From Lepidodermella squamata (taxonomy: Eukaryota; Animalia; Gastrotricha), in the NCBI GenBank assembly GCA_047495785.1, contig JBLDXI010000030.1, forward strand, positions 558,001 to 622,000: a stretch of DNA of 64,000 nucleotides. Direction: 5' to 3'. Shown piece after piece: positions 29,096-64,000 of this stretch. Below the pieces are notes generated by a model. The model had not been told where the DNA came from, searched no databases, and worked only from the letters and a program-made list of their open reading frames with translations. A program made the translations under genes and the position numbers. Positions within the stretch are counted from its first letter, which is position 1. Each line of letters opens with the position of its first letter.

Positions 29096-29416
29096 TTCGT
29101 TGACAAAGCTGAACTGCAGTGGGTGACAAAAAAATAGCCAATTGTCGATGAATAACAGCAGCGTTGAAAGCTGAGATATCATAGCCAGCTCATGGCAGCT
29201 TTTAACATGAGTGTGACAAAGATAAGACGTTTCTTATCAAAACCAATGGCAAGAATAAGTGTGAAAGTTTCTTCGATAAGCATATTTTTCATGTTCCTCA
29301 GCAAGTCGGATTCAAAATCTTGTTTACATTGTGCTATCCAACCGTGAAAATTTTTCAACCTTTCTATCAGCCAGTGTTCGCGATTAAATCCGTAAGCTGA
29401 GGAGTCTATTAATTAT

Positions 29417-45887: not shown

Positions 45888-46921
45888 CAGGGTATGATAC
45901 CGACCGGTTTTTTTGTTGAAAAAACCAATGGCAAATAATGTAAAGAGAATTCCTAATAACGTAAATAAAATAAAAATTACAGTAGTACCACCATGGGTAG
46001 TATTCAGGGTATTTATTCTGAACGGTTTTTATTCTGAAAAAACCGCCCACCAGTTTAAACCGATTTATACCGGTAATAAACACCGGTTTTTTAATTTCAC
46101 CGGTTTAAACCGGTTTAAACCGGTGAAAAAAACCGGTTTATTTTATATATGCTAAAATCACTGAAATGTCTTATTTGACATAGCCAGAGCTCGCTAGCAC
46201 TTGGTCCTTTAGAGATTTGGACTGTACCACGTGATTCTACGTGAAAAACTGCATATCACACGGCCATTTTTCTCACCCGGAATAAAAAAATCTCTTAGTG
46301 CAATAAAACAATAGAAAAAAACTAAAAAGCGCAGTTATCTCCGGAAGTATGATGACTAGTAAAGTTCTGAGAACGGATTCGGATCCGCCGGAGTTTCTAC
46401 GGGGGGTTTCAACGACAAAGAAAGCGGTTTTGCCGGTTTTATTTGAAAATTTCAACTTGAAAGGTCTAAAACCGCCTAATTATACCCTACCGGGAGTAAA
46501 ACTGATTTCAGGATAGTTTGTTTACCATGATCAATATCTTCATGAAAATTTGGGATCTAAGGTAGAATTTTCCGCTGAACACGATGGTGACATCGAATCA
46601 ACCGCATCGATTATCGAATATCGATTATTGGTAACTGATCGAATGATCGATTTTTCGAAATTTAGCACAATCGATTTTATGTAATACAGTGTAGTCTTTC
46701 GAAAGTATTGCGGCTGTGCGGTATTGATCCTGGGGACATAATGACTCTTAGACAACTTCTGGCTGGCTGTTATATATGAAAATGTGAGCTTTTTGCGGGA
46801 AAACACCCCAAAAACCGCTTTTTCAAAAAACCGCGGTTTATTCAGGCCCTACAAAAACCGGTATAAACCGGTACCGGTTTCAACCGGTTTATACTGGTTT
46901 GAGTTTAAACCGAATACCCTG
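45888..46921. mobile_element. Non-autonomous hAT-type DNA transposon (~1.03 kb)
   Basis: Termini CAGGGTAT...ATACCCTG with an exact 8-bp target-site duplication AAATCAAA (45880-45887 and 46922-46929). Dense subterminal AAACCG/CGGTTT repeats at both ends; no long ORF. Confidence 0.85.
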
Positions 46922-47270
46922 AAATCAAAGCTATACATACATATACATACAGCCATTGCGGCAACACTGCCGCAGTAGCGCCGGGAGAATCTTAGAGACT
47001 GATAATAACAATATATACTTAATATACTTAATGTTAGTAAACATTTCGAGTCGTTCGAATATAATTGAACCGTTCGAAATCCTATTGGAAATAAAAATGC
47101 GCGCGTGGATTAAACATAGGCGGGCCTGGAAATGTGCATTCAATTCAGTGTGCGAAGTAGATCTGGGGATAACTCGGCCAGTAGTACTCTAGAATCTTAT
47201 CATTCTTCGGCCGGTTGAACTGGGAGTACCGTACTTCCAGTCTCCCCGCTACTTCTCTCGGTGTGTGCAT

Positions 47271-47967
47271 TTAAGATAACATCAGTGAGAAGAGAATTGC
47301 GTCAATAATCATTACAATTAGCACTGCTGAGAGAGCTATTGCCATGTCAAGAAGGCGATGCAAGGGTAAGACCAGGAAATTTTTCAACTTGAAAACACGA
47401 GATTTCTGTGACTCTGGGATACTAGGACTCAAGCAAGTGTAGGCCGTGATTACGACTGCAACAATGAATTTAACTGCGACCATGTAGACAAGGTAGACAT
47501 GATCTGAAGTCTTTGGCATCATGCCGAAGATCAAAGTGAGAAATACAATGTAAGAAAGCACGACAGTCACGCAAAACGCAGATTGGTCCCTATTCATAGG
47601 TTCGGCCATCAAAGAGACGACTTGTAAGATGAAAAGGGTGATGGTTGGCACGAAGATATTGCAAAAGTAGTAGCCACTTTTTCGGCGAAATCGAATCGTC
47701 ATAAAAATTCGATCAAAAGAGAACAGGTTATCTTGCTGCAATTCACTGCTGTTATACCCGAATACCTCGACAAGCGACCAAATGTCACTATCAACGATAA
47801 AGCTGTTGCCAGCGGACATGTCGACTTGCAACACTGAAAGGCGGAGCGCTAGGAATCTGTGATCATCACTGGATTCTAAAACTAGCGAACAGTCTTGCGT
47901 ATCGAAGGGAAATTTGCGGTAGCTGAATGCCGTGCAAGTAGTATGTGACGACCAAAATATTCCGATC
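47271..47967 (-). pseudogene. 3' half of a Cys-loop channel gene; 5' half absent or displaced by the Maverick insertion
   Basis: IFWSSHTTCTAFSYRKFPFDTQDC and four TM helices are intact. Similarity stops at ~47,970, where element sequence begins; no signal peptide or N-terminal exons nearby. Confidence 0.7.
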
Positions 47968-48443
47968 TGTGACCGTTGAGAATACCCGAAAAAACCCGAT
48001 AATACCCGGTAGTACCCGATTCTCCATGGCAACGCGGGGTCGCGCATATCAGATCATTGAATATTAATCGACGCGATTAATAACACAAATAAATTTATAT
48101 GGGGATTTTATTTCGTCATTTTCGTCATTTTTCAGATTATGTCACGCAAATGTCATCATTTTTGTAATTTTTCGCACTTTTTGATACAATAACACCTCTC
48201 AGACAAGGTGTGAATTATCGCCGCGGGAAAAAGAATGCGTGCACAGGAACGTGGGTCAAGAGGTGACGCCCACAATGGGAGTTATCAGAACACAATAGGT
48301 CACAACACCACTAGAAATCACGCATTCGACCCGTCTAAAATCTGCGGATTGACAACTTTTCTTTACAACCGCCGCGGCATCGCAAGCATTAACATCAGCA
48401 GAGTTGAACAACATTCATCGCCGGACAAATTCAAGTAGCTAGC

Positions 48444-49867
48444 ATGAATAAAGTGAGTAATACTTCCATGTGTGGAGCAAAAAAAAACACACATTCATTC
48501 AATATATAATTTTAACGGTTTTTCACTAATTTTAGTCTTCTTCGTGCGATTCCTTATCAACCAATGGCGAAAATGCAATATTCGACGACGACGACACGCC
48601 GAATTTGACGCTGATCGCACCGCACTTACCGGCTACTTGCATGGCCGCCAGCACGGCGAATGTTCATGTCGGCGGATGTCCCGCGCCGAATCGACGAATT
48701 TCGCTGTTCGCTGTAAATCATGCATCGAATTGTCGGGGCACATCGACCCGCTCCCCTACCAGGCTTCGTAACACCCCGGTTGTCATCCCCCTGCACCGTC
48801 TCGATAGGGCGACATCCCAGCTGAGAAATCGCTTCGTAAATATTCCGCTCAATTATTTTGTCGAATCGTCATCCTCATCGCCCTCTGATCCGAGTATTTC
48901 TGGCGGTTTCAGCCCTGACGTTCCCAGTTATGGCAGCGGTAGCGATGTTTCGAACGATTTAGTTTTTTTTACATCTAATTCGAGTTGTACATCGGCTAGT
49001 AAATCGGATGAATTTGAGCAGTTTTCGCCGCTTCCGTTGTCGACGTCTTCATCTCCATCGGTGCTTTCAACACCGTCATCATTAGACGTGGCCTTGAAAT
49101 ATTATGACGTATCAAATGAAACCGTCTGTTTTTCCTGCGAAAAAGCATCCGTCCAAACATTCGAATTCAACGTTTGCCATCATCAAATGTGTTCTGCTTG
49201 TCTCTTCACCGATATCGATTATTCGGCATTTTCATTCGACGTTCAAATTTGCCCGGCATATTATTGCCGCGGTATGCTTCCCCAGACAGTAACTCCTCTT
49301 CGCGACCACATTTATCCAAACGACTACTTCGAGGGGAGAGACTGTTTTCCGGCGACTAAATTCTGCGCAAATTGCAGCGCCGACGTTCCGCTCGCCCGTC
49401 GCAACAGGGCGATAGTACAGTGCCAGATTTGTGAGTCGGCGTATTGCGGCCACTGCAGCATATTCAAACTCAACCATGCGTTCGAAGTTGCCAATCGCCA
49501 ATTGCAACGATTCCCGGAAACAATTACCGCATCAGACATATGCAGGGTGACTAAACACGACGGTTGCGATTCAAGATTCGCCTGCAATGCCGACGTTGAA
49601 AACTCTGAGCCACACGTTACTTCTATCAGCAACAAACTTGTGTCCCGCATTATTTATGACCACGATGTTTTGCCATCAATTGAGGCCACTGTGCAGCTAA
49701 TCCATGCCCGTGGAGAAGATGTCCGCGAAATCGCGGAATCTGCTCGCCTTTTACCCGACAAAAAGGACAAATTCACCAGGCTGATGCGCGCTGCAGCTGT
49801 CGCCGACGTTCTCGGGTGCGCTTATTTACGACGCTATTACAGACTTATGGCGAAGGCGGTCTATTAA
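48444..49867 (+). CDS. RING + B-box (TRIM-like) putative E3 ligase; exons 48444-48452, 48536-49867
   Basis: ATG-AAT-AAA|GTGAGT...CACTAAT..TTAG| splices in frame to the 420 aa ORF. RING-like CFSC...CHHQMCSAC...CPAYYC; B-box-like FCANC...CQICESAYCGHC..H; helical C-terminus. Confidence 0.7.
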
Positions 49868-50078
49868 ATAAAAAAAATAAAATTAAAATAAAAATTAATT
49901 CTCATTTTTTCAATACTATTCACTAGTTCTCAGTGTGTGTCTGTTCTTATCTGATTTGTTGCTGTTACCATTTTTGATTATACTAGCATGGCTCGCAGTA
50001 AATGAATTGTATAAAGCTGCATTTTATTGTTCATGATTGCTCATTACTCGAATTTTTTGTTGTTGCGATAAATAAATA

Positions 50079-50666
50079 ATGACGGATCAAGAACTCATCG
50101 CGGACTTTTATGTGTCAAATATTGTTAGCAGTTTTTCGATAAAAACTAATTTGGATCTCAAGAAACTAGCCAGAACGTTGCATAACACGGAGTACCGAAA
50201 TAAAAATTTGAAAAGTGCGCTCGTTGTTCGGTTCAAAAAACCCCGAAAATTTACAGCTTTAATTTTTGGTTCTGGTAAAATTATTGTTACCGGTTCTCGC
50301 ACTGAGACAGAAGCCAGAGAAAATTCGCGCATTATTGCTCGAAAAATTCAAATTAAATGCGGATATTTATTAGCCAAATTTGCCGAATTCAAAATCATTA
50401 ACGCAGCAGTTCATGGGCGCCTACCTATTGCAACACCTTTGAACCCTCAGAATTTCGCGGTGATAATGCGTGAGATATGTCTTACAGCGCTATGGGATAT
50501 AAAATTCCCGGCCGGGTGTCGATTAGTGTTGCGTGAGTACCCAACGTTGAAAATCACCGTATACTACACGGGCGCGGCGATAATATGCGGATGGAAGCTG
50601 TGTATTACTCAACTCAATAACGCGCTAAACGCTGTGATAATGCGTGCACTACAAGCAACCGCTTAA
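50079..50666 (+). CDS. TATA-binding protein (TBP)-like, core domain only
   Basis: SNIVSSF..LDLKKLA..NTEY...ALVVRFKKPRKFTALIFGSGKIIVTGSRTE.EAR...R.IARKIQ is TBP repeat 1. A divergent second repeat follows (FKIIN...FPAG...TVYYTGAAIICG). Confidence 0.88.
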   Translation: MTDQELIADFYVSNIVSSFSIKTNLDLKKLARTLHNTEYRNKNLKSALVVRFKKPRKFTALIFGSGKIIVTGSRTETEARENSRIIARKIQIKCGYLLAKFAEFKIINAAVHGRLPIATPLNPQNFAVIMREICLTALWDIKFPAGCRLVLREYPTLKITVYYTGAAIICGWKLCITQLNNALNAVIMRALQATA

Positions 50667-51038
50667 CAAGTGAGCATGATCACGCTAAAACTGTAAAAGT
50701 ATATATTTCCTCACACCGATTTTATTGGACCCGAAAAAATGTAACCGCCACTTGAATTCTCAGCATCGCGGCGGGTGCAACCGTTACAGCGGCGAATTGC
50801 ACCCAACGCATACCTCGCGTGATGCGACAAAACTCCCCCGCCGCGGTCGCCTGTTTAATGAGGAAAGCGGCGGCGAGCCAGTATGACAGTTTTAAAGGCG
50901 GTGCCATCGCGCTATCTCCTACCGGCTACAACCGGAAAATCGCGGCTTGTCTAAAATACGATGCATTCACGCCAATATAAATACGCCCTAATTTGTCGAT
51001 TAGTCTCTCATCAGTCTACCTGGAGGCAACACCAGCAA

Positions 51039-51066
51039 CTCTCTCTCTCTCTCTCTCTCTCTCTCT
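51039..51066. repeat. (CT)n microsatellite upstream of the PC4-like ORF
   Basis: About 14 CT units. Confidence 0.9.
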
Positions 51067-51093
51067 TGCATCAGTACATACATCATCAATAGC

Positions 51094-51729
51094 ATGACTA
51101 GCTCTGTAGTAAACGATTTTTTCTTCAAAAACTCACCAGTTATCGAGGTCGAAACTGCCGGAGATGTAGTATCAGACTCTCAGCAAATTTCGCTAGATCC
51201 ATCGACTCTGGATGGCAAAAGTCGATTGTCCATTTTCTCCAGGTTTCGTCAACACGTCCCTGCAAAAGTTGCAAAAATGTCACATTTAGCAGCTAATTCA
51301 CTCGATGGCGAATCGTATGTTATGTTGGCACTCGTCGATGCAGACTGCGATGACCCACTCTACTGCTTGGGAGTTTTTAACAAATCGGAGGCTCCTAAGT
51401 CTTATTATTTACGCAAAGGCCTATATCTGTTCAAATCTGAACTGGTAGACATCCTTAAGGCCATTAAAGAAGCTAGGGTTAACTGGGTGTCCAGCGTGGT
51501 TGAAAAACTAGCTGCTGAGGAGTTGCCTCTTGGAAACTCGCCACCCTATCGAGTTTGTGGCAATTTGTACGCCAAAGTTTTCGCTTATCGCGGCAAACTT
51601 GGGCTTTGCAAACTAGTCGACCTCAGGATTCACAAACAGGACAATACTGCAACGGTGGATGGCATCGCGCTTAAGGAGGACGAGTTTCAAAAGTTACCCG
51701 CGGCTATCGAGACTATCCTTGCAGACTAG
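51094..51729 (+). CDS. PC4-like ssDNA-binding/coactivator protein (possibly two PC4-type repeats)
   Basis: C-terminal AKVFAYRG...LVDLRIHK...ATVDGIALKEDEFQKL resembles the PC4 pattern (V..FKG..LIDIR....PTKKGISL...QW..L). An earlier RKGLYLFKSEL segment may be a second copy. Confidence 0.6.
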   Translation: MTSSVVNDFFFKNSPVIEVETAGDVVSDSQQISLDPSTLDGKSRLSIFSRFRQHVPAKVAKMSHLAANSLDGESYVMLALVDADCDDPLYCLGVFNKSEAPKSYYLRKGLYLFKSELVDILKAIKEARVNWVSSVVEKLAAEELPLGNSPPYRVCGNLYAKVFAYRGKLGLCKLVDLRIHKQDNTATVDGIALKEDEFQKLPAAIETILAD

Positions 51730-51866
51730 TTCTTGATAATTAAAACTACCTTAAAAAAAAAACTGTTTCTTGCATTAAAATTGTAAATATTGTACATAAT
51801 CATGCATTGTTTTTTTTGTGTTATTTTAGGCTTTATAAAATCTTAAAAATCATCAAATTAAATTAA

Positions 51867-52127
51867 ATGGCCGACCTTAGCTCGTATTCCGGCGCATTCA
51901 AGCAGCACATTCAGCAAGCCCTGGAGCTGACGCGTTCGTGCTCAGATGACGATGAGTCTCAATACAAGCGCTACCAGCGTGCTGCTAGCGAGGTGTTGCG
52001 TCTCGAAAACGGCATGGTTGAAAAGGTACGCCAGCTTGCTCTCGCCCTTCAGCCGTCGAACGCTGTCGCCCGCCTGATCAAGGCCGCCATTCTCAATCTC
52101 GTCGACCCAGAAATCGATCAAGCGTAA
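51867..52127 (+). CDS. Small helical hypothetical protein
   Basis: 86 aa GC-richer ORF flanked by AT-rich spacers. Confidence 0.5.
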   Translation: MADLSSYSGAFKQHIQQALELTRSCSDDDESQYKRYQRAASEVLRLENGMVEKVRQLALALQPSNAVARLIKAAILNLVDPEIDQA

Positions 52128-52338
52128 CATAACCAATCTGTATCTGTAAAATATGCAAAAATGGTCCATTTTTAATTGTAACAAATTAAGGAGTAAAATT
52201 ATTGGTCTGTTATTTTTTTGTGTCGTGTTGTTTATCACACACATACCGCTAAATAGCTAATTGGTGGAGGGACAGACAAATTTATATGCCAAAATTCCAT
52301 CTAAAAAAATCTATCTCGTTGTTCTAGATGATTTGTTT

Positions 52339-55300
52339 ATGGAATTGAAAAAAACTAGTCAGCTAGAACTCTCGAGAAAATTCAATTTGGGTATCACAAC
52401 TTACGTATTTCGCGAAAATGAAGCATCAAATTCAATCACCACCCCCCAAAATCAGTCAGGCGAAGGCCGCCCCGCAAAACGTCGTCGTCGAGTCTCCGTC
52501 GCCACCACCACCACCTCCAACCCCTCAATCATCAAAACAGCGCCGAAAAATTCAACCACCCAAAAAAAAGGTGATAACATCCTCCAATCCGACACCCAGG
52601 GTTCCCAAGTTTCCGATAGTTCCGAAATCTCAGTCGACCCCCATACCCAATCACCCAATCAGTCAGCTGTTAGCCCAGTCAATACCACAGATAAGGGTGT
52701 ACAAGGTTCAACAACTAAGCGAGCAACCGTCGACATCGTCGACCAATTCAAAGAGCTTTACGCTAGTTATCTACAAATATCAGCAGCCATAACTCGGGAC
52801 TTCCAACCACGGGACTATGTTAGACTCATTATTTGCAACGATAGCCTACTTCAAACCCCAATTTGTACAAAATATCTGAAAGTTGAGAATTTTACTGTTG
52901 ATGAGGTGGTATCGCAAACGTCAAAAGTTCTCAATTCGAAACAGGCCCTCTCTCATAAGTGAGTTCCTTCAGCAGTTATAAAAAAAATTGCCTCCTTAAA
53001 ATCTTAACATTTGTTTTCTATTACCCTTAAGTCCCAACGATTGGAAGATTTATGTGAAACACGTTAAGGTGGGCGAAGGAGTTAAAGGGGCAGCATCCCG
53101 AGCAAAAATAGGAGAAAAAATCACATCATTTCTCGCGCGCTTAACCTCCATCCTATTGATTTACACCGACGCGTCTTTGCCGGACAATAACTACTGCTTG
53201 TTCAGGTCGGTTGTCGTTGGGAAAGGGGCTAGGGATTTCGAAGCCGGCCGCATTTCAACACACTCGTGGGATCTACTGAGGTATAACGCTCGCCATCAAA
53301 CTATTAGAGCTAAGCAGCTAATGAATTCTGCCAAAATTCCATTAAATAAACAACGATACGACGTAGACGATTTAGACCTAATCTACCCAGTCCTGAGAGC
53401 TGAGAATCCTAATTATCAGCTCGTAGTTTTCAACATATCCAATAAAGCCCTCGTGAAATGTTTACCTCATTCGTTACCCCACTGTCATCAGTCCGAGATC
53501 GAACGAATATTCATTCTCTACATCCCTCCCGAAGAAATGGTGTCGAGTGATCTTACCTCAATTGGTCATTTTTGCGCTGCCAAGTCGATCGGTGCAGTGA
53601 TTCCGGATTTTTGCCTGGTGTGTCTGAAACAGGTCCGTAGTTTGAGGCGGCATAAGTGTCGTACTTCCGACCAACGACAGTGCCATCGATGCTTCATGTA
53701 CAACAACCCGTCGTGCTTCGTTGCATCGTCCCCATCGACGTATCAGTATTGCGCTTCTTGTTTTCGGGCCTTCGCATCAGCTGAGTGTTATGATCGCCAT
53801 CTGCAAATACAAAAATTTACAAAAACAATCACAACGACTGCGTGTGAGCGATATGCTTACTGTTCGGAATGTCGAGGCACGGTATTAAGGGGGCGGTTAA
53901 CAAAACATAAGCATCGAAAACCCTCATGCCCACACTGCGGAGTGGTACTCAGCACATGGCCAGTTAGTGAGAAAGATGCTGATCCTGAAGAAATAGAACA
54001 TGTAACAACTAGAAACGACCACGTGTGTTGCCTGCCCGTGTTTAAGCCCAAGGTTTATGGTTCGAAATCTGACACTAAGAATAGGTATTTTAACTTGACC
54101 GACTGGCCAATCACTATTTGCGCCGATATCGAAACGGTGAAAGAATCCAATTCGATTCTCTCGCCTGTACTCGTGTGCGCAAAAATTCACTGCGAATTAT
54201 GTCGAGAATTTTCTTCGAGCCAAATTTGCGATTTTTGTGCCCCCTCTGACCACGTTTTTATCACACAAGACCCCGCATGGCAGTGCAAAAATGAGCCAGT
54301 CAAAAATTTCTTGCAATTCATTTTCAAACTTTGTGAGGAAAAGAACAAAAAAATCTTGGTCTTTTTCCACAATTTGCGAGGTAAATTTAAAAAAAAAACA
54401 CCACCACCAGTACTATAAATTTTCCAATAATTAATCAAAAGGTTTCGATGGATTCTTCGTGCTACAAGCTCTTCATGATTTGAAAATTCGAATCAAGACA
54501 GTGGAAAATAACGGGCTTCTTACTTGCATCGAAGTGAAGAAAAAAATCAAGTTTCTTGATAGCCTGAATTTCATGCAACAAAAATTGTCCTCGCTACCTA
54601 GCATGTTTGGCTACTCGGAAACTAAAACCATTTTCCCCATCGAGTGGCTAACTCCCGAGCATTTTGATCGCAATTGTCAAGGCGCGATTCCCCCCTTAGA
54701 CGCATTTACACCACGTCAACGCTCGGAAGATATGGCACTTATCAAGCAATGCCAAGCTAGAGGATTGTATTATAAGGAGGATCTAACAGCATATTGTTTG
54801 AACGATTGCGAGGTGAGCATGCGAAAAAATAGCTATATGATTTTATATTATTGCTGGTTTTTTTATGCTCAAAGGTTCTAAAGAAAGCTGTTATCGCATT
54901 TCAATCTATGATTCGAAACCTCACAACTTGTGATCGCTTTCCTACCGGATGGGACCCGTACGAAAATAGCATGACAATTTCGTCCCTAAGGTAATATCCT
55001 AGTTCATCACCACCTCTCCTAACACCAATTGGACCCATTTTCAGCCAAAATATCTACCGATCAGTATTCATGACCCCATCCAGTATTACCCTTATACCAG
55101 AAAAAGGATTCAACAGCAATAACAACCAAACAAGTGACTTGGCAGATATGTTCCTTACCTGGTTAAGTGTCCGGGATCAGTTGTACTTGCAAACAGCTTT
55201 CAACATCGGCGAAAAACGCATCTTCATCCCAGAATTGAACAAATACGTCCGCGTCGATGGCTACCAGGACCGGTCGGAATTAAATCAACCTGATCTAGTT

Positions 55301-57241
55301 GTTGAGGTTTGCCCATTGGCAATCTCTTGCACTGTTTTAATCGCCTTTTTCCGTTTCATTTTCATGTTCACTCGAAGATATGCGGCTGCTTCTATCATTC
55401 GTAAGCACAACAAAATTTTGAAATTTTTTATTAAAAATTATGTTTCATTTACCAAGGTGTGACCAGTGCTTTGCTGTACATCATCAGCATGGATCGCTCC
55501 ATCCTATTGCACGAGTCTCGCATCAAACCGTGTTCAACAGCACCATTCGCAGGCTAGACGCCATTAAGAACGCCGGCTACAACGTGGTTGTTTACTGGGA
55601 ACATGAAATTAAACAGCTGGAAAGGACGGATCTGGCTTTTCGAGCTTTTGCCGAAAATTGGCGAAGTAATCGCGACGACTCAGTGACTCCATTGAAACCG
55701 AGAGACGCCCTGTTTGGAGGTAATGAAAAAAATTGCATAATTATTAAAATGTGATTATTGAAATATTCCGTATATTAGGGAGGGTGGAAGTATTTGCAGG
55801 TCACATCAGGTCGACTGAGACATCGAAAATATGGCACTACGACGTTGTTAGGTGAAATAGTACAAAAAATTACTTCAATTATTATTTGTATTTTTTTTCT
55901 AGCATGTATCCGTACATTCAATTCTCTCACAATTTCGGCGTTGGGCCAGTGTGTAAGAAGTCTTTGCAGTTGCGCGGAAATGACGCGGCTATTCGCAGCT
56001 ACATTCTCAGTGCTGAGAATTTCGGGCGATGTTATGGACTTATTAAAGTTAAAATAGCCGGCCCCTGGCCATCTATGACTCCCAAGTGTCTACCTCCAGT
56101 TCTTCCGATTAGAATAAAAAAGCGTACTTACTATGCTTTATGTGCGAAATGTGCTGAGATACACGAGCAAAATCAATGTGAGCACAAACAACCCATAGAT
56201 CGCGCGTGGACGGGGACATATACGTTAGCTGAAATTTACACTGCGTTAGAGGAAGGGTACCACTTGATAGAAGCGTATGAACTCTGGGTTTGGCCAGATA
56301 CTAGTAACAACCTATTTCGGCCGTTTATCGCTAAATTAATGGCGTTAAAAATAGAGGCTTCGCCATTTGAGCACGCGGATGACAAAGAAATGCGCGAAAA
56401 CTTTGCCAAACAATGTCGCGACCAGCAGAACCTAGAGATTAACCCAGATAAACTGACAAAATCAGGCACGCCTGCGATGAGATCGACAGTGAAACAAGCG
56501 CTAAATAGTAATTGGGGTAAACTTGCGCAACGGGCATCATGCGAGCGAGTAATATACGCTGATACTAGGAAAGATCTACTCGATATATGGGCAGACCCTG
56601 AAAAAACCATTATTGACTTGCAACCGATAGGTCGCAATGACGCGAGTCAGAGAGTAAGGATTGTATACGAAACTAGTGACGAATACGTTACAACGCTAAA
56701 AACCACAAATCTAGTTCTCGCCGCGCATATAACTGCATATGGGCGCCTTTATCTGTTCAAATCGATGAAAGCGTTGATAGCAGCAGGGGCAAAGCTAGTC
56801 TATTGCGATACTGACTCGATTGTTTTTGCCGCCGCAAATGATGATTCTGAGTGGCGCGAAGCTATAAAAGTTGGAAATATGTTAGGCGAATGGTCGAATG
56901 AATGTGGGGACGAAAGTACGTTCATCGACGAATTCATCAGCCTAGGGTGCAAACTGTACAGCGCAAAACTATCATCAGGGGTTGTAAAGCTGCGGGCAAA
57001 AGGAATATCACGAAATTTGAAATACTCACCTGACGATGTGTGTTCATTTGAAAACATGAAACACCTATTGACCAACCATTTTAGCGACGCGAAGAAATTA
57101 CCAGTTCCGCAGACCACCATGAAGCGGATGAGGGCACCAGTAGCAGGGATTAGGGTAGATGAAGGAATGAAGTGCATAGGTATCACTCTAAATAAGCGGC
57201 GATTTAACGCAAGCGACTTGTCGACATCGGACCCTTACTAG
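52339..57241 (+). CDS. Protein-primed family B DNA polymerase (pPolB), 9 exons, 1471 aa, with OTU-like and VSR-like accessory domains
   Basis: Exons 52339-52958, 53032-54380, 54442-54812, 54875-54990, 55045-55306, 55378-55400, 55457-55719, 55779-55851, 55903-57241 total 4416 nt (1472 codons, in frame). Motifs: ADIET (ExoI), HNLRG|FDG (ExoII), YCLNDCE|VL (ExoIII), E|ICGCFYHS|C, LFG|GRVE, YDVVS|MYP (motif A), KQALNSNWGK (motif B), YCDTDS (motif C). Confidence 0.93.
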
Positions 57242-57302
57242 CTCTCTCTCCCTCTCTCTCTCTCCCCTCCCATTCTCTCCCTCCCATTCTCTCCCTCCCT
57301 CT
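57242..57302. repeat. CT-rich low-complexity tract directly after the pPolB stop
   Basis: ctctctctcc... with repeated CCCATTCTCTCCCT units, followed by AATAAA at ~57316. Confidence 0.8.
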
Positions 57303-57428
57303 GTGTGTAAATAACAATAAAAATTTGAAAAAATCCAACTACATCAGTGTAATTTTTATATACCCTTAGAAATATTGCCGAATTGTTATTACGCTGCTCA
57401 TCGTATCGCAAACATCAAAGCCATCATC

Positions 57429-57983
57429 ATGGACCGAGACCTCACAGAATATGACCAGATTATAACCCCGAGCCTTACCCTACAGGTAACAAGACTGAAC
57501 ACATACATCTGCTCGCGATATCTCACGTTCACAATGTCATCCCGCCATTTTCTTGATGAATTCGCCCCGGCTTTGCTGCGCTCGGCAGCAAATTTTGTGC
57601 ATGCTGCCGCGGCGGATGTCAGCGACGTGGACTCGAGCATCTATCGGCCGGAGTTACTATATGGGTACCAGCCAACCGTCTACACAGTGCTAGGCCCGCA
57701 CTGTGTAGCACGCGACTACTACATATCGCTGACCAAACAACCAAACTCGCCAGCAATGACTGTAGTGATAAATCAGCTGAAGTATGCCTTCGACAAGTCT
57801 TTGCACTACCACTTCCTCGAATCGGTCCACAATGAGATCACCATCGGATATGAATCCGAATTCAAACTCCTGGTCGATGCTGTGGAGTACGTGATGGTCA
57901 ATGAGGAGTTGAGACGCTGTATGTCGCAGCTTAGGGACAACGACCACGATGAGGAGGAAGAAGAGGAGGACGACGAATACTAA
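57429..57983 (+). CDS. Hypothetical element protein with acidic C-terminal tail
   Basis: ORF ending in DNDHDEEEEEEDDEY; no family recognised. Confidence 0.6.
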   Translation: MDRDLTEYDQIITPSLTLQVTRLNTYICSRYLTFTMSSRHFLDEFAPALLRSAANFVHAAAADVSDVDSSIYRPELLYGYQPTVYTVLGPHCVARDYYISLTKQPNSPAMTVVINQLKYAFDKSLHYHFLESVHNEITIGYESEFKLLVDAVEYVMVNEELRRCMSQLRDNDHDEEEEEEDDEY

Positions 57984-58319
57984 TCTGTGATATCGGTGTA
58001 ATGATCTACCCTCCCTCGCAAGTCACCTACTGGTATTTATGTACATCTTACCTATAATTGTCATGTATCATTGCAGTGCTGTATAAACTACTTATATCCA
58101 ACTACCAATCTATATATCTGTTCTTTTTCTACATAACGAAAAAAAATCGCAACTAAAAATAAATATTAATCGCCATCTTGATTAATAATCGCCACGTTAT
58201 CCCAGTTTCGTTTTTTTTTTATCTACAAAAATTATATACCCACCAATAAACAGTATAGCATTGTAATTAATAATAATTTTTGTAATTTTTAGACTTGCTT
58301 ATTTCTAATTTCTAATTCT

Positions 58320-59294
58320 ATGGCGCTACCAACAATCACGCGGACCGTTTTCACCCCCGCCCTGGTTCGACGCGACATCTGCAACAACGTGACGCTAGCC
58401 TTCGCCCACTGCGTAGAACAAAACCTGAAAGGTGTCATGTTGATGACAAATGGTGTGACTGCGGATCCTCATTACACCGAAGTCGTCGACAGCGAGGACG
58501 AAGGGTTGGTTGGCGACTCCCAAACGCATCTATCGCACGAAATTACTCCCAATGACGCGAGAGTCTATGCCGACAAGACCTCTCGGCACGTCATTGCGGA
58601 GTATGACTGCCAATATACCATCATATTGTCGCATCTCAATTTCCTCTACAGCGAGTGTCAGCCTGAGTGGTCTAATAACCAGGGCGGTGGGGCGGAACCA
58701 GATGTCACTTATTTCGGCGGAACCCCCACTTTCGACTATGTCATGTGGCTGACCTTGAAATACATTCGTGATGGGTGCATGAATCGACTGGGTATCGCGA
58801 ACGCGCCTACAACCTTTCCGTGTTCTCAGACGACCTATCTGTCGTATGAAAATCGCCCAGTAGAAGAGTCAGAGACTGACTACGGCGTAGCTTCTGCGCT
58901 ATTTGACCGACTTGCAGGGGCAACGGTTGCTACCCTGCGACTTGAAGACGTACGAGTGGTTGGCAAGTACCTTTTGAACGGTACTGTTGTACGCGTGCAC
59001 GTTTCATATGTAGAAATGGGGCGGAGATATCTATTAAGCGAGAAGGTCACAGGGGTAGCCTTAAACGAGTTAGTAGCATCGGTGGGCAGTGTGCTCTACG
59101 TGTCGACCACGGGGGTGATGCCAACCGTATCCCTGCGACGTATTGTTTCGGCCCTTCGAGTTTGGGCTGACCCAATGCGTGTCTACTCAACGGAGGAAAC
59201 CAGACAACTCTATTCTAACGAGTTAGGAGCCATCATGGACCGCATTCTGCTAGCAATGTTACATCTGGCTACCGTTGAACCAATGGACACATAA
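58320..59294 (+). CDS. Hypothetical 324 aa element protein
   Basis: ATG-initiated long ORF after an AT-rich spacer; no family recognised. Confidence 0.7.
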   Translation: MALPTITRTVFTPALVRRDICNNVTLAFAHCVEQNLKGVMLMTNGVTADPHYTEVVDSEDEGLVGDSQTHLSHEITPNDARVYADKTSRHVIAEYDCQYTIILSHLNFLYSECQPEWSNNQGGGAEPDVTYFGGTPTFDYVMWLTLKYIRDGCMNRLGIANAPTTFPCSQTTYLSYENRPVEESETDYGVASALFDRLAGATVATLRLEDVRVVGKYLLNGTVVRVHVSYVEMGRRYLLSEKVTGVALNELVASVGSVLYVSTTGVMPTVSLRRIVSALRVWADPMRVYSTEETRQLYSNELGAIMDRILLAMLHLATVEPMDT

Positions 59295-59914
59295 TAGTAA
59301 GATTAGGATAACTTTCTAGTTGGTAGTCTACTACTGAGTCACAAGAACATAACTGCCAGCCAGCCACGCCGATATATAGAACTACTACTACTACTTTCTA
59401 AGGGTTTGTCTTCGCGTGCCACACACACACGCCAATACACACAAACCAATAATTAACATACTTACCTCGTTAATTATCCGCTTTTGAGCCCGCGTTGGGT
59501 GCGTGTGTGAGTTTTTCGCCACCAATCCACCAAATTCCTTGATTTTCTCTGTGTGTTGAAGTACCGTCACGTGTATTAATTAGGAGCTCGTACACACGTT
59601 GCGATTTGTATTGTTATTGATCCGCTATCGTCGTCGTCGTCGTCGTCGTCGTAATCGTCCCACCTTTGCTTTTCGTGGTTGCGGACTGCAGTGTTCTTCA
59701 CTGCACACTCAGGGGGCGCATGCACGCATCGGCGCCTTCTCGATCGTAACAACTCGGAGGTAAATACTAGGGCTACCACTGCTGCACCTGGTGCTCCATC
59801 TATGATTGGCTAATTGCTTGCGTGCAACGTGTACAAACATTCCGGCTTTTTTTCTCCTCATCTTCGTCTTCATCCTTCATTCATTTGAAGTCGTCACATC
59901 GTCATCATAAATCG

Positions 59915-59989
59915 ATGCTTCTTAATCCAGCTGTGTGCATAACTTCGTCGCTGTCGGTCGTAGCAGGTGAGCCATCGGGGGGTCGCCCC

Positions 59990-60024
<35 letters not shown>

Positions 60025-60304
60025 AGACCGTCCGCCCGCTGCATATCCGGTATCGTCTGTAAATAATAATAATAATAATAATAATAATGGTCATCAGCCA
60101 ATTGGTGTGCTGTTGCATCAATCACATACCAGTAGTAGTAGTATTAATAGCAGCGTCGTCGTCGGTAGTTCCAATATTAACAGTAACACCAGTGTTAGTA
60201 CTCACTACTGCGTGTTTCAAATTTGCACATATACCATAGTTGTGTTCATAACTATCGCAAGTCTAATATATGTAATCTATGAAATGATCGAATCATTGAT
60301 ATAA
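59915..60304 (+). CDS. Low-complexity (poly-Pro, poly-Asn) protein with C-terminal hydrophobic helix
   Basis: MLLNPAV...P12...N9...; (CCG)n and (AAT)n repeats are in frame; ends IVVFITIASLIYVIYEMIESLI. Confidence 0.4.
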
Positions 60305-60550
60305 ATATATGTATCATTCATGAATATATTAATCAAAAAAATGACACATGTGAACTGTAAAGACGATGTCAACAATAATAACCGGGATGATGATGATGAT
60401 AATCTTGTCTATGAGTTATGCGATCTGACTGACTGCGCGGGCACAGCGGGGATTTAAAAAAAATTTACCGCTCAAGGCCTTGTACATGAATTATTAAAAA
60501 ATCTTCAATGTTTAACAATTTCTTGTTTTTTTTTAGTTTTGAAAATTATT

Positions 60551-61326
60551 ATGCTACATAGCAACTGGGATTTTCCTTGGCAACGCGACGTCGCCGGTAT
60601 CGGATCGATTCGACTCATCATTGGACCAATGTTCAGGTACGTTGCATATATTTTATGATGATCAATATAAGTTAATTGCTTCTATTCAATAGTGGGAAAT
60701 CAGCAGAGCTGCATCGTAGAGTCAACAAATATGCTGAAGCTGAATGTGGTGTCGTGCTGATTCAATATGCGTATCCCATTGTCGACCGTATTCATGGGTG
60801 CACCGCAACTCTGCACAGAAATGTGGCAATTCGCTCACTGCAGTCACTCGAATCATCTGTTACGCTGACCTCAATGAACAATTATCGTTTGATTGCAATC
60901 GACGATGGGCAATTCTTTCCGTCTGATTTGGCAGTTGTTGCTCATCGAATGGCTAGCGCTGGGAAGGATGTGATAATCGCATCACTGGATTCTGATTTTG
61001 CTCGTCGACCTTTTTATCATATTGCAGACCTGATTTGTCGAGCGGAAAGTGTTTCAAAACTATTGGCAGTATGCAAAAACTGTCTGAACCCTCACGGGCT
61101 ATACACCTATCGATGGTCAAGCGATAATACTCTTCGTGTGTATGGTCGTGGTAACTACGTTGCTCTGTGTCGCCGGTGCTATTTGGAATTTCAAATGCTC
61201 GCCGGGTCAATAGCCAACCAAGAACAACAACAACAACAACAGCAGCAATCATCTTCATCCGCAACAACGGCAGCAGCCTCATCTATATCTTCTTCTGTAG
61301 AATTCTCATCATCGTCGATTCTGTAG
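60551..61326 (+). CDS. Thymidine kinase (TK1/poxvirus type II family); exons 60551-60636, 60693-61326
   Basis: Removing a 56-nt intron restores the P-loop GPMFS|GKSAEL. Also IAIDDGQFF, IIASLDSDFARRPF, KLLAVCKNC and YVALCRRC (Zn lasso); poly-Q/S tail. Confidence 0.88.
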
Positions 61327-61424
61327 AATAACGCATAAAAATAACCGTGTAGTTGAGTAGATCTCTCACAAAAAAACATCAAAAAAAAACTACGCCATGA
61401 GTCAATGTACATTATTTTGGTTTA

Positions 61425-62498
61425 TTAATTATTAAATCCTATCCAATTAAGATTAGTTGGGTTCAATGAGTTAGGCTGAGTGGAACTGCTTGTAAATTTG
61501 TGTTTCTTTGTCACTGGTGTAGGGTGCATGGATGTTGCTGTTTTTGTTGGTGATGGCTGTGTCTGGTTCAAATTTGCAAATGACCCTTTCGGGTACAACG
61601 ATTGATTAGATATCAGATTTTTCGGCATGTTTGTCAGCTCGATCAATTTTTTGATGTTTTTAACTGCTGGTGAAGCAATAGGCTTTTGGGAGTTTTTTGC
61701 AGTAATGTAATTTAAAGCCTCATGTGCGTTCAATCGATGTTCGACCCCCTCATCGTCCCCAAATATAATTTGTTGATTTGGGAGATCAAATTGAACACCG
61801 TGATCTTTCGATGCAATCGTTGTCAGAAATGTGCATATACTGTCGGCAGTGGATCGTTGTGCTGGTTTGAACCCTTTGTATAGGGCCGCTATGTCCTTGT
61901 TAACTTTCTCATCACTACTAATATCACCGCCCAGCCTACTCTTCTTCTTATTAGCTGATTCCTGGCCGTTATTATTTGCTGTGGTAGCAGTATCAGTAAC
62001 CGTCCGTGATGTGTTGAGTTGCGTCGCTGGTGTTGCGTTTGATAGATTAGAGCCTATCCCATTTTCATTAGCATAGAATAGCTTTCTAAACAATGAGTAA
62101 TCATCTTCGTTATCAGATTCTTGAGTTTTATTAGGCTCTGTTGGCGTTGAGGGCGATGGACGTTTGTTAGTACTAGAGCGTCTAGCATCCAATAATTTAA
62201 TGTCTTTTTGAAGGGCCTGAAACTGTGTGAATAACTCTCCAAATTTTCTCATCGTATCGCTATACGTCATGCCAGGCGGAGGATGTGATAGTTGCAAAAT
62301 GTTACCCATTTCATCTGATACTGTTTGTAGTTTGGACATTTCTACAGGGTCCATGAGTGTTTGTTTAAGCATAGCGCGTTTAGTAATTGCTTCCATTGGG
62401 GACTGATGGGCGTGTGATGTTGCTGTAGTTGTTGTTGGTTGTGGTTGTGTTGCTGAGGAATATGGCACAATCATGTATCGTTTTGCCGTGGTTTTCAT
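61425..62498 (-). CDS. Maverick-type hypothetical (putative core) protein
   Basis: 357 aa; AKRYMIVP N-terminus, EMGNIL, and NMPKNLISN near the C-terminus resemble an ORF I recall from Maverick morphogenetic modules. It is co-oriented with the ATPase and protease. Confidence 0.55.
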   Translation of the reverse strand: MKTTAKRYMIVPYSSATQPQPTTTTATSHAHQSPMEAITKRAMLKQTLMDPVEMSKLQTVSDEMGNILQLSHPPPGMTYSDTMRKFGELFTQFQALQKDIKLLDARRSSTNKRPSPSTPTEPNKTQESDNEDDYSLFRKLFYANENGIGSNLSNATPATQLNTSRTVTDTATTANNNGQESANKKKSRLGGDISSDEKVNKDIAALYKGFKPAQRSTADSICTFLTTIASKDHGVQFDLPNQQIIFGDDEGVEHRLNAHEALNYITAKNSQKPIASPAVKNIKKLIELTNMPKNLISNQSLYPKGSFANLNQTQPSPTKTATSMHPTPVTKKHKFTSSSTQPNSLNPTNLNWIGFNN

Positions 62499-62510
62499 GT
62501 TTTTTTTTGT

Positions 62511-62891
62511 TTACTTTCCTCGATTTACTATCGACTCAATTAATGTTGGAATAAGGCTAGTTAGGGATGAAAGTAAGATAGGAATGAATGCCCCTTGTCC
62601 ACTTTGAATCAGGCGCTGTCGGCTTTGCTCGATACTATTGCCTTGGCCAACTTTTTTTATGGCGTTTCTATACTGTTTCAATCTGCGCACTGTGTTTGGT
62701 GGAAGTTTCTGATTTTTCGCTAGCACATTTAACGCGATTTCCGCTATTATATGAATTACGGAGGATGGTGCAATTTGTAACAATAAACCTCGTTCTTTTT
62801 TATTCTTAGCATTAATAATGAGTCGTAAAAAGTGCATCAATCGTTTGGCCTTGGATTTCCGGTGTTTATTGGTGCCGGGGTTGCGTGCCAT
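62511..62891 (-). CDS. Basic putative core/membrane-active virion protein with protease-cleavage-like site
   Basis: Lys/Arg-rich; IAEIALNVL; ends QSGQG|AFIPILLSSLTSLIPTLIESIV, a Gly-rich adenain-type site followed by an amphipathic helix, typical of the small ORF next to Maverick ATPases. Confidence 0.65.
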   Translation of the reverse strand: MARNPGTNKHRKSKAKRLMHFLRLIINAKNKKERGLLLQIAPSSVIHIIAEIALNVLAKNQKLPPNTVRRLKQYRNAIKKVGQGNSIEQSRQRLIQSGQGAFIPILLSSLTSLIPTLIESIVNRGK

Positions 62892-62915
62892 GAAATTCTA
62901 TTGCTAGTACAGCTG

Positions 62916-63692
62916 CTACTCTGTCGTGGAAAGTGATTTTGCGAATGACACGTCGTTTACATACTTGGGCACGCGCTCCGTGTATGTGTCTGGTAGAAAA
63001 ATGGACCCTCCGGCAAATTCAGCTCCGATCCCGAGAAAATCACGTACCCGATAAAACTCGGGTATATTGTGACGCAAATCTAGCACCAAATACTGGTAAG
63101 GTTTACTGGTAATTTTAGTAAATGCATCAAATATTTGTCTCCAAATTGTAGGCTCGGATTTCATGAGTAGTATTTTAACTGACATCGTTTCCGATCTGTT
63201 GCGATACAAGATGAAAATGTCAGTGTTTGCCGCGATTATGGACGAATATTTTCCCCGCGGATGAACGCGTTGCTGGCTGATCATTATCGAAACGTTACAG
63301 TGGTGTTTAAAACGCGTAAAATAATCCGCAATCAATTCGCTGTCATGTGCTCGCAAAAAATTGTCCTCAATTATCATCAACGACGTGTCACTTGGTGCGA
63401 AATAATCAGCGGTCAGATCGTCGATCCCGTTCAGGAATTCGATTTTCACCCCGCGGGCTTTGTACACATCCTGAGCGAGCTTGTCATGGTAGTCGGGGGT
63501 ATTGACCCCATAGCAATAGACAATTCGATTCGGTCTTGGGACGAATATATCAGCATCTAGCAACATTTGGCGAGTGGTTGTCGATTTTCCTGAACCCGAG
63601 TTCCCGATCAACGCAATCGTGACTGGTAAGTGAATTGAACCAATTATCTCCATTTCCGCCCCTGATTGGTAGCTTGCTGACATGATTGGCAA
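62916..63692 (-). CDS. Genome-packaging ATPase (A32/FtsK-HerA superfamily)
   Basis: Walker A GNSGSGKST, RIVYCYG, Walker B LMIIED, FTRFKHHCNVSIMISQQ, KPYQYLVLDL. The start codon may be 63683 or 63653. Confidence 0.9.
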   Translation of the reverse strand: MPIMSASYQSGAEMEIIGSIHLPVTIALIGNSGSGKSTTTRQMLLDADIFVPRPNRIVYCYGVNTPDYHDKLAQDVYKARGVKIEFLNGIDDLTADYFAPSDTSLMIIEDNFLRAHDSELIADYFTRFKHHCNVSIMISQQRVHPRGKYSSIIAANTDIFILYRNRSETMSVKILLMKSEPTIWRQIFDAFTKITSKPYQYLVLDLRHNIPEFYRVRDFLGIGAEFAGGSIFLPDTYTERVPKYVNDVSFAKSLSTTE

Positions 63693-64000
63693 AATTTCTT
63701 TGGATTAATTTTTTCGCTTATCAACCCTTTTCCGAATAGTTTTCGAGCGAAAGCGTGAATATGGCAATCTATAGATGTGCACGGTGCGATGTATGGCGAA
63801 AATATACTTGAAATTATATTTTTCATAGACAAATTTCTCGCTCTGTAGTATAAATAGACTAGCGAAAATTCACCACAAGTTGATGTTAACGGGGATTGCA
63901 CAGGTGCTTGATTTATTTCATAAATTCCACCGCTCCTTGATGATGTAATTTTTAAAAATCGCTCGATCACTGGATTATATTCGCGCATGTTTCGTGCCAG
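63644..64000 (-). CDS. Adenain/Ulp1-like maturation cysteine protease, C-terminal part (N-terminus beyond the window)
   Basis: VQSPLTSTCGEFSLVYL contains the oxyanion Gln and catalytic Cys (Q-x6-CG). Adjacent to the ATPase. Confidence 0.8.
   Translation of the reverse strand: MARNMREYNPVIERFLKITSSRSGGIYEINQAPVQSPLTSTCGEFSLVYLYYRARNLSMKNIISSIFSPYIAPCTSIDCHIHAFARKLFGKGLISEKINPKKFCQSCQQATNQGRKWR

What the first reader, a model, noticed from the sequence alone, without database searches (positions are those of the whole stretch)
52339..57241. Maverick pPolB split by 8 spliceosomal introns, several inside catalytic motifs, including a 23-nt micro-exon
Seen in sequence: the ORF track shows six fragments that look like a decayed polymerase. 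Removing eight GT-AG introns of 51-73 nt gives one 1471-aa frame with no stops. Introns: 52959-53031, 54381-54441, 54813-54874, 54991-55044, 55307-55377, 55401-55456, 55720-55778, 55852-55902. Splicing rebuilds ExoII (HNLRG|FDG), ExoIII (NDCE|VL), FG|GR and motif A (YDVVS|MYP); the micro-exon 55378-55400 supplies ICGCFYHS of the VSR-like motif. Established: Maverick/Polinton genes are generally described as intronless or intron-poor. Inference: this is an intact, intron-rich polintovirus lineage whose introns match host intron size. Splicing could gate replication, and ORF-based screens would miss it or call it a pseudogene.
Basis: partly seen in the sequence, partly recalled or inferred. Interest (0 to 1): 0.92.

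Follow-up and report, generated by a model that had tools for sequence, protein, structure and literature searches.

The report
Intron-split polymerase gene of a Maverick-type element
A virus-like Maverick/Polinton element sitting in a eukaryotic chromosome carries a DNA polymerase gene that looks broken but is most likely intact, because it is interrupted by eight short host-style introns, which matters because such elements are usually assumed to have no introns and are screened for accordingly.

Summary
At the coordinates in the finding there are eight GT-AG intervals of 51-73 nt. All nine exons are open in the frames the model implies, and the total is 1471 codons.

I searched each exon separately against two profiles of full-length relatives. 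The exons land on contiguous profile positions in the right order. Five junctions fall inside the most conserved blocks. The 23-nt micro-exon supplies three near-invariant residues, and no random 7-mer out of 5000 matched it in both score and placement.

Splice signals are non-random: 7/8 extended donors (p=7e-6), 6/8 donors preceded by AG, and intron GC of 0.28 against 0.45 in exons. A neighbouring host gene has introns of 50-55 nt.

The protein belongs to the animal Maverick pPolB family at about 30% identity. It keeps all eight near-invariant acidic residues.

Looked-up relatives from metagenome or read-archive assemblies come as uninterrupted proteins, so the introns are probably lineage-specific gains.

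The gene lies in a compositionally distinct island of at least 16 kb that the window cuts off. No integrase, capsid genes or terminal repeats were seen.

There is no RNA evidence, no second copy and no host identification. Whether the element is mobile or domesticated stays open.

I did not build the joined protein and did not fetch relatives' DNA.

The parts
52339..57241 (+). pPolB gene: nine exons and eight short GT-AG introns (51-73 nt; bounds as in the finding, not repeated here), 1471 codons. No stop or frameshift apart from the eight intervals.
   Evidence: Frame arithmetic. Pfam PF03175 on exon 3 (3e-5) and exon 9 (7.7e-8). Exon-by-exon profile placement. Conserved columns kept.
52339..54380 (+). 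N-terminal region (exons 1-2). It has a Ser/Thr-rich start with a basic cluster, then a domain conserved in the family (local profile positions 43-507).
   Evidence: Relatives align to it only in the predicted frame.
54442..55306 (+). Exonuclease-side part of the polymerase (exons 3-5). Exon 3 matches PF03175 positions 20-148.
55283..55660 (+). Vsr-like (very short patch repair endonuclease-like) insert, approximate bounds. It covers the end of exon 5, the 23-nt micro-exon and most of exon 7.
   Evidence: Family profile A1 matches Vsr structures 1vsr/1cw0/1odg at E=0.002, profile positions 782-855. Exons were mapped to the same profile. The micro-exon keeps 3 of 3 near-invariant columns. The window's exon 7 alone gives no PDB hit.
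55779..57241 (+). Polymerase domain (exons 8-9).
   Evidence: Exon 9 against the profile of 68 relatives: E=1.7e-103. PF03175. Family profile matches phi29 polymerase 1xhx at 1.3e-7. All near-invariant acidic columns are kept.
48100..64000 (.). Candidate element: a compositionally distinct island around the polymerase gene. The left edge is approximate and the right side is cut by the end of the window.
   Evidence: Tetranucleotide signature. Codon-usage correlation. Tightly packed ORFs. No inverted repeat partner in the window.
60551..61326 (+). TK1-type thymidine kinase gene with one 56-nt GT-AG intron. Its Walker A loop is complete only across the junction.
50079..50666 (+). Divergent TBP-domain ORF (195 aa).
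   Evidence: PF00352 at 1.3e-20. Only about 79 bits to solved TBPs.
62916..63692 (-). P-loop NTPase ORF (258 aa), a candidate packaging ATPase.
   Evidence: Only weak P-loop family hits. Protein P0115 of the crinoid Anneissia japonica joins a pPolB C-end to a stretch homologous to this ORF (tblastn 2e-9). The AF2 model was too poor to use.
61425..63988 (-). Compact minus-strand block of four adjoining or overlapping uninterrupted ORFs (357, 126, 258 and 114 aa). The last one runs towards the window end.
   Evidence: No family assignment. The AF2 model of the 357-aa ORF was poor.

Best explanation
[quoted passage not shown] It lies in an integrated virus-like island.

The eight short intervals are U2-type GT-AG spliceosomal introns of the host's size class. 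The visible relatives lack them, so this lineage probably gained them. A full-length 1471-residue polymerase can therefore be made only from a host-spliced nuclear mRNA. One 23-nt micro-exon contributes three near-invariant residues of the Vsr-like insert.

Shown: the frame arithmetic, contiguous homology exon by exon, the splice-signal statistics, the composition contrast, the host intron size and the retention of conserved residues.

Inferred: that the introns are actually removed in vivo, that the protein is active, and that the introns arose during long residence in this host lineage. Whether the element is still mobile is not decided by this window.
For: 1. All exons are open in the predicted frames and no split codon is a stop.
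2. tblastn with 150 relatives hits every exon only in the predicted frame, and the hits are colinear.
3. Each exon was searched separately against a profile of 68 full-length relatives and against an independent profile of 25. The exons land on contiguous positions, with 0-3 positions between neighbours. The two exceptions are junctions followed or preceded by unaligned tails.
4. Five of the eight junctions lie in the top 10% of local conservation, and conserved blocks are completed from two exons.
5. The micro-exon's best placement falls exactly in the gap between exons 5 and 7. None of 5000 random 7-mers equals it in both score and place. It keeps 3 of 3 near-invariant columns.
6. Seven of eight donors read GT[AG]A against a 14% background (p=7e-6). 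Six of eight are preceded by AG against 9% (p=1.3e-5).
7. Intron GC is 0.28 against 0.45 in exons.
8. Six introns of a neighbouring host gene are 50-55 nt.
9. A rule-based scan without homology recovers five of the eight exactly.
10. The gene keeps 79 of 87 covered columns that are at least 95% conserved, and 8 of 8 near-invariant acidic columns in conserved blocks.
11. The neighbouring TK gene has one intron of the same kind.
Against: - There is no RNA evidence.
- Only one copy was seen.
- Intron 5 has a weak donor, and five of the eight acceptors are AAG rather than the commoner YAG.
- The window protein keeps fewer of the 90%-conserved columns (81%) than any of the 68 relatives (at least 91%). 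This comparison is biased, because the relatives define the columns.
- The introns are not shared by the looked-up relatives that come as uninterrupted proteins from metagenome or read-archive assemblies, so conservation cannot vouch for them.
- Pfam alone scores exon 3 just under its gathering cut-off.
Confidence: 0.8

Rival explanations
1. The polymerase gene is no longer part of a working element. It is a long-resident, vertically inherited (possibly co-opted) host gene of Maverick origin that gained introns like any host gene.
For: - Eight dissimilar introns, plus one in TK, suggest long residence rather than a single event.
- The introns are absent from looked-up relatives that come as uninterrupted proteins from metagenome or read-archive assemblies.
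- No integrase, capsid gene or terminal repeat was seen in the window.
- The protein is more divergent at conserved columns than any relative.
Against: - The surrounding 16 kb still differs from the host in tetranucleotide signature and codon usage.
- It holds tightly packed, uninterrupted ORFs, including a P-loop ORF linked to pPolB in another animal. This is not expected around an old solitary domesticated gene.
- The window ends before the rest of the element could be seen.
Confidence: 0.3
2. It belongs to a circulating, still mobile or infectious Maverick lineage that carries the introns in its own genome and relies on host splicing each time it is expressed.
For: - The gene is intact and catalytic acidic columns are kept.
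- Neighbouring ORFs are intact and compact.
- The island is compositionally distinct.
- As an analogue, a latent giant virus has host-like introns in a subset of its genes (bioRxiv 10.64898/2026.10.09.758095).
Against: - No second copy, no ends and no integrase or capsid genes were seen.
- No intron-bearing relative appears among 1.84 billion representatives, where the best hit is only about 30% identical.
- Gaining nine introns is easier to picture in a chromosome-resident sequence.
Confidence: 0.25
3. It is a decaying pseudogene. The eight intervals are ordinary insertions that happen to be bounded by GT and AG and are never spliced.
For: - GT and AG are frequent, so a frame-restoring pair can often be picked.
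- One donor is weak and five acceptors are AAG.
- There is no RNA evidence.
Against: - The 4.4 kb of exons contains no stop and no small indel.
- Every interval adds nothing and removes nothing relative to the family profile.
- All eight fall in a narrow 51-73 nt range, are AT-rich and carry extended donor signals.
- Near-invariant residues are kept.
Confidence: 0.06
4. The intervals are copies of an intron-generating transposon (introner), or another excised DNA class such as ciliate-type eliminated sequences.
For: Introners are known to populate Maverick-Polinton-like proviruses of dinoflagellates (PMC11957031).
Against: - The eight intervals resemble neither each other nor anything else in the 64-kb window beyond chance 11-16-mers.
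- Their ends follow the spliceosomal AG|GT[AG]A...AG pattern rather than TA...TA.
Confidence: 0.03

Closest known systems
pPolB of animal Mavericks/Polintons. Named relatives returned here are uncharacterized proteins or 'DNA-directed DNA polymerase' of Nematostella vectensis, Xenopus laevis, Nasonia vitripennis, Anneissia japonica, Paramacrobiotus metropolitanus, Heterodera trifolii and Acanthoscelides obtectus.
   Same: - Same length class (1150-1650 aa).
- Same order of conserved blocks.
- PF03175 in 25 of 25 relatives scanned.
- The family profile reaches phi29 polymerase and a Vsr-like insert.
   Different: - Only about 27-33% identity to the best relatives.
- Eight introns where the looked-up relatives from metagenome or read-archive assemblies are uninterrupted proteins.
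- Lower retention of conserved columns.
Intact vertebrate Mavericks (Barreat and Katzourakis 2021, PMC8097293).
   Same: Virus-like integrated elements with a pPolB as replication gene.
   Different: [quoted passage not shown] Short 'introns' reported by GeneWise are treated as insertions. Here the interruptions behave as true introns, and the ends and other core genes were not seen.
Nematode Mavericks with cargo genes (bioRxiv 10.1101/2022.07.12.499685).
   Same: Introns occur inside a Maverick. Cargo genes of host type sit next to core genes, which is comparable to TK here.
   Different: In nematodes the core genes, polymerase included, are described as intronless and only cargo has introns. 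Here the core polymerase has eight.
Maverick-Polinton-like proviruses of dinoflagellates populated by introners (PMC11957031 / PMC12166617).
   Same: Spliceosomal-type introns inside integrated elements of this supergroup.
   Different: Introners are repeated mobile families in protist hosts. The eight introns here are unique sequences, with no copies in the window.
Punuivirus, a latent endogenous giant virus of Chlamydomonas (bioRxiv 10.64898/2026.10.09.758095).
   Same: A subset of viral genes carries host-like GT-AG introns, while virion genes do not. Here the polymerase and TK carry introns, while the compact minus-strand block does not.
   Different: A different virus realm-level group and host. 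Those introns average 176 bp and have RNA support. None of that was tested here.

Membership tests
Maverick/Polinton element | [quoted passage not shown] | tested here: met
   PF03175 on exons 3 and 9. Exon 9 against the profile of 68 relatives: 1.7e-103. Named animal relatives.
Maverick/Polinton element | Retrovirus-like (rve) integrase | tested here: inconclusive
   No rve hit in any ORF scanned. The island runs off the window end at 64000.
Maverick/Polinton element | [quoted passage not shown] | tested here: inconclusive
   No family hit. The AF2 model of the 357-aa ORF was too poor for a fold search (pLDDT 49). The rest of the element lies outside the window.
Maverick/Polinton element | FtsK/HerA-type packaging ATPase | tested here: inconclusive
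   The 258-aa ORF has Walker motifs but only weak generic P-loop hits. It is linked to pPolB in one crinoid protein. The AF2 model was poor (pLDDT 42).
Maverick/Polinton element | Adenain-like cysteine protease | tested here: inconclusive
   The 114-aa ORF at the window edge is only a lead from reading its sequence. It has no family hit.
Maverick/Polinton element | Terminal inverted repeats and target-site duplication | tested here: inconclusive
   No inverted repeat involving 48-64 kb. The right end is outside the window.
U2-type spliceosomal intron | GT...AG ends whose removal restores one frame and contiguous homology | tested here: met
U2-type spliceosomal intron | Extended donor context (AG before, GT[AG]A after) above background | tested here: met
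   6/8 and 7/8, p=1.3e-5 and 7e-6. One weak donor.
U2-type spliceosomal intron | Size and composition like the host's introns | tested here: met
   51-73 nt and GC 0.28, against six host introns of 50-55 nt and GC 0.33-0.41. The host sample is one gene only.
U2-type spliceosomal intron | Removal seen in RNA | not testable with these tools
   No transcript data are available. The source organism was not identified.
U2-type spliceosomal intron | Positions shared by relatives | tested here: not met
   13 of 20 looked-up relatives come from metagenome or read-archive assemblies as uninterrupted proteins spanning the junctions. That these were called without splicing is my inference. DNA of relatives was not fetched.
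Introner (intron-generating transposon) | Many similar copies | tested here: not met
   No similarity among the eight or to the rest of the window. The whole genome was not available.
Vsr-like endonuclease insert in pPolB | Sequence match to Vsr endonuclease | tested here: inconclusive
   Family profile against 1vsr/1cw0/1odg: E=0.002. Pfam Vsr in 2 of 25 relatives at E 0.17. The window's exon 7 alone gives no hit.

The most novel reading that the evidence does not exclude
An animal-type Maverick lineage with a two-part expression design. Its replication genes (polymerase, thymidine kinase) have become host-like, intron-bearing nuclear genes that need the host spliceosome, including a 23-nt micro-exon. 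Its compact morphogenesis block stays intronless. The element also carries unusual cargo (a TBP-like protein and TK) and is still able to persist or spread.
Probability: 0.25. Interest if true: 0.8.

Novelty: new variant of a known kind. Interest (0 to 1): 0.6.

Why it matters
Surveys of Maverick/Polinton and related integrated viruses commonly assume that these genes have no introns. They use bacterial-style gene callers or treat short 'introns' as decay (PMC10120064, PMC8097293). A polymerase that is intact only after eight splices would be scored as a pseudogene, so such lineages would be systematically missed or miscounted.

It also gives a concrete case for asking how virus-like elements become dependent on host RNA processing. 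A second question is whether intron gain marks long chromosomal residence or a regulated expression programme, as recently described for a latent giant virus.

Tried and rejected
**Searches that came back empty or unusable**
- All three homologous-protein searches (host receptor ORF, P-loop ORF, TK) were blank, although TK scores 3e-31 in Pfam. A blank there says little.
- Exact look-up of a host protein found nothing on record, so the source organism stays unidentified.
- AlphaFold single-sequence models of the 357-aa and 258-aa ORFs were too poor (pLDDT 49 and 42). I ran no fold search.
- PDB searches with single exons gave nothing useful. Only the family profile reached phi29 polymerase and Vsr.
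- No tRNA or Rfam match. No terminal inverted repeat.
- Kapitonov and Jurka 2006 and Krupovic and Koonin 2015 are not held. What they say about introns is known to me only through PMC8097293.

**Alternative gene models rejected**
- One single intron in place of intron 5, the micro-exon and intron 6 gives the wrong frame. It would also drop three near-invariant columns.
- An alternative acceptor for intron 7 offered by my scan leads into a frame with no homology.
- The introner idea was rejected.

- I did not build, translate, search, fold or put in a tree the joined spliced protein. Everything was done exon by exon.

- In some searches, exon bases and exon peptides were pooled in memory only to count composition. 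Nothing joined was translated, searched, saved or printed.
- Script outputs echo the interval coordinates of the finding.
Full report
**Observation**

The eight intervals named in the finding all start with GT and end with AG. They measure 51-73 nt and have phases 2,1,0,2,0,2,1,2. The nine exons are each free of stops in the frame fixed by the cumulative exon length. No codon split by a junction is a stop. The model runs from ATG 52339 to TAG 57241, for 1471 codons. A bacterial-style ORF list shows the gene as separate fragments. Read through unspliced, six intervals hold an in-frame stop and the other two meet one just beyond.

The gene contains 245 GT and 268 AG, so a frame-restoring pair can often be found by chance. 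I therefore did not count GT-AG itself as evidence.

**Identity**

Pfam's organellar/viral family B polymerase model (PF03175) hits exon 3 (3e-5, just under the gathering score) and exon 9 (7.7e-8). A full scan of 1.84 billion representative proteins with exon 9 gave 4028 hits. The best were only about 29-33% identical, and most were 1150-1650 residues long with the match at their C-terminal end. Where sources give names, the relatives come from animals: Nematostella, Xenopus, Nasonia, a crinoid, a tardigrade, a cyst nematode and a beetle. Two metagenome entries are labelled Vsr endonuclease. All 25 relatives scanned carry PF03175. A profile of these 25 reaches phi29 DNA polymerase (1xhx, 1.3e-7) and Vsr endonuclease (1vsr, 0.002). 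This is the animal Maverick/Polinton pPolB family with its Vsr-like insert.

**Test of the splice model, exon by exon**

I built no joined sequence.

- tblastn with 150 relatives hits every exon only in the frame the model predicts, and the hits are colinear.
- Each exon peptue was searched separately against a profile of 68 full-length relatives. The placements were 43-151, 158-507, 509-636, 638-667, 671-740, 747-752, 754-831, 833-854 and 857-1261.
- An independently built profile of 25 relatives gives the same contiguity.
- Nothing of the family profile is lost or duplicated at any junction. The single positions between neighbouring exons correspond to split codons.
- Five junctions (2, 3, 6, 7, 8) lie in the top 10% of local conservation, and conserved blocks are completed from two exons.

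**Micro-exon**

The 7-residue peptide of the 23-nt exon finds its best placement exactly in the gap between exons 5 and 7. Of 5000 random 7-mers, 0.2% score as well and 0.7% land there. None does both. Three of its six aligned columns are shared by 96-99% of relatives, and all three are kept. In the open frame that contains it, the profile match covers just these bases. A single larger intron in its place gives the wrong frame. In the A1 profile the micro-exon lies at positions 786-791, inside the Vsr-like match at 782-855.

**Splice signals and host comparison**

- Seven of eight donors read GT[AG]A, against 14% of all GT in the gene (p=7e-6).
- Six of eight donors are preceded by AG, against 9% (p=1.3e-5).
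- Introns have GC 0.28 and exons 0.45.
- Acceptors are AAG five times, TAG twice and CAG once. Intron 5 has a weak donor. These are the weakest points of the model.
- A rule-based scan that uses no homology recovers five of the eight exactly.
- Six introns of a repeated-exon host gene at 0.9-1.9 kb on the minus strand are 50-55 nt, with GTAAGT-type donors. The size class therefore matches the host.
- The eight introns resemble neither each other nor anything else in the window, so they are not recent introner copies.

**Integrity**

The exons keep 79 of 87 covered columns that are at least 95% conserved, and 88 of 109 that are at least 90% conserved. All eight near-invariant acidic columns in conserved blocks are kept. 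The window protein is nevertheless more divergent at such columns than any of the 68 relatives (81% against at least 91%). This comparison is biased because the relatives define the columns. Breaks other than the eight intervals: none.

**Are the introns shared?**

Thirteen of the 20 relatives I looked up come from metagenome or read-archive assemblies as uninterrupted proteins. Their contigs are barely longer than the gene, and the proteins span the junction positions. That these were called without splicing is my inference. On that reading the introns are lineage-specific gains.

**Setting**

From 1 to about 46 kb the window holds host-type genes:
- Six paralogous ORFs of about 800 aa. Four have receptor ligand-binding domains and one of these has a class C seven-helix match.
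- Cys-loop-channel-like ORFs.
- An ankyrin protein.
- Multi-exon cysteine-rich genes.

The tetranucleotide signature changes at about 46-48 kb. Windows to the left correlate about 0.8 with the host mean, and windows to the right 0.23-0.63. Codon usage of the polymerase exons correlates better with the neighbouring ORFs (0.67) than with the host receptor ORFs (0.45).

The island holds these features:
- A Cys-rich RING/IBR-like ORF.
- A divergent TBP-domain ORF.
- The polymerase gene.
- Several unassigned ORFs.
- A divergent TK1-type thymidine kinase. Its best solved match is vaccinia TK at 94 bits, with human TK1 at 89 bits.
- A compact minus-strand block with a P-loop ORF.

A crinoid protein joins a pPolB C-end to a stretch homologous to that P-loop ORF (2e-9). 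The TK gene has one 56-nt GT-AG intron, and its Walker A loop is complete only across that junction. No integrase, capsid protein, protease family hit or inverted terminal repeat was found. The window ends 6.8 kb past the polymerase gene, so membership of the whole island in the Maverick class is only partly tested.

**Literature**

- Intact vertebrate Mavericks are defined by intronless ORFs, and short GeneWise 'introns' are treated as insertions (PMC8097293).
- Nematode Maverick core genes are called intronless, with introns only in cargo (bioRxiv 10.1101/2022.07.12.499685).
- A large protist survey used a bacterial gene caller because endogenous viruses 'do not contain introns' (PMC10120064).
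- Exceptions of another kind exist. Introners populate Maverick-Polinton-like proviruses of dinoflagellates (PMC11957031). A latent giant virus of Chlamydomonas has host-like introns enriched in its latency genes (bioRxiv 10.64898/2026.10.09.758095).
- I found no description of an animal-type Maverick polymerase with multiple host-type introns. Two key older papers were not available.

**Verdict**

The claims of an active 'polintovirus lineage' and of splicing as a gate on replication are not shown. I rate it a new variant of a known kind, interest 0.6.

**Left out or limited**
- The joined spliced protein was not built or searched.
- Relatives' DNA and other copies were not fetched.
- The host was not identified.
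- Structure models of neighbouring ORFs failed.

Exon bases and peptides were pooled in memory for composition counts only. Script outputs echo the finding's interval coordinates. A few textbook motif patterns were recalled from memory in my reasoning and used nowhere.

Noticed in passing
window 60551-61326 (+): A divergent TK1-type thymidine kinase gene inside the island has one 56-nt GT-AG intron. Its Walker A loop is complete only across the junction. Its best solved match is a poxvirus TK, scoring about the same as human TK1.
   Followed up: partly
window 50079-50666 (+): A single-ORF, divergent TBP-domain protein of 195 aa lies next to the polymerase gene (about 79 bits to solved TBPs). 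This is unusual cargo for a Maverick, if it belongs to the element.
   Followed up: partly
window 48605-49867 (+): A Cys-rich ORF with weak RING/IBR/CXXC-like hits sits at the left edge of the island.
   Followed up: no
window about 46000-48600: The tetranucleotide signature and codon usage change here. This is the probable left border of the foreign island. Short ACCGGT-containing repeats lie at 46.1-46.9 kb.
   Followed up: partly
window 61425-63988 (-): A compact block of four adjoining or overlapping uninterrupted ORFs includes a P-loop ORF. The 114-aa ORF at the window edge reads like the C-terminal half of a cysteine protease, which is a lead only. These ORFs are intronless, in contrast to the polymerase and TK.
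   Followed up: partly
window 4149-6548, 16971-19373, 24549-26963, 33307-35706, 36242-38563, 43247-45523: Six intronless paralogous ORFs of about 800 aa. Four carry a receptor ligand-binding domain and one of these has a class C seven-helix match. Two of the six form an inverted pair, 71-80% alike over 99-550 nt stretches.
   Followed up: no
window 800-16000 (-): Cysteine-rich genes are built from repeated short exons with a period of about 175 nt, separated by 50-55-nt introns with GTAAGT donors. I used them as the host intron sample.
   Followed up: partly
window 11054-11983, 19639-23239, 27316-30007, 47271-48047 (-): Several Cys-loop-channel-like ORFs share a 41-nt conserved stretch, which suggests a local gene family.
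   Followed up: no
window 57242-57302: A CT-rich 14-nt tandem repeat starts directly after the polymerase stop codon. An AATAAA-type signal lies 75 nt downstream.
   Followed up: no
whole window: No protein of this window was on record in the large collections, and word-indexed searches were blank even for TK. The source lineage seems poorly represented, or the index is too coarse for it.
   Followed up: partly
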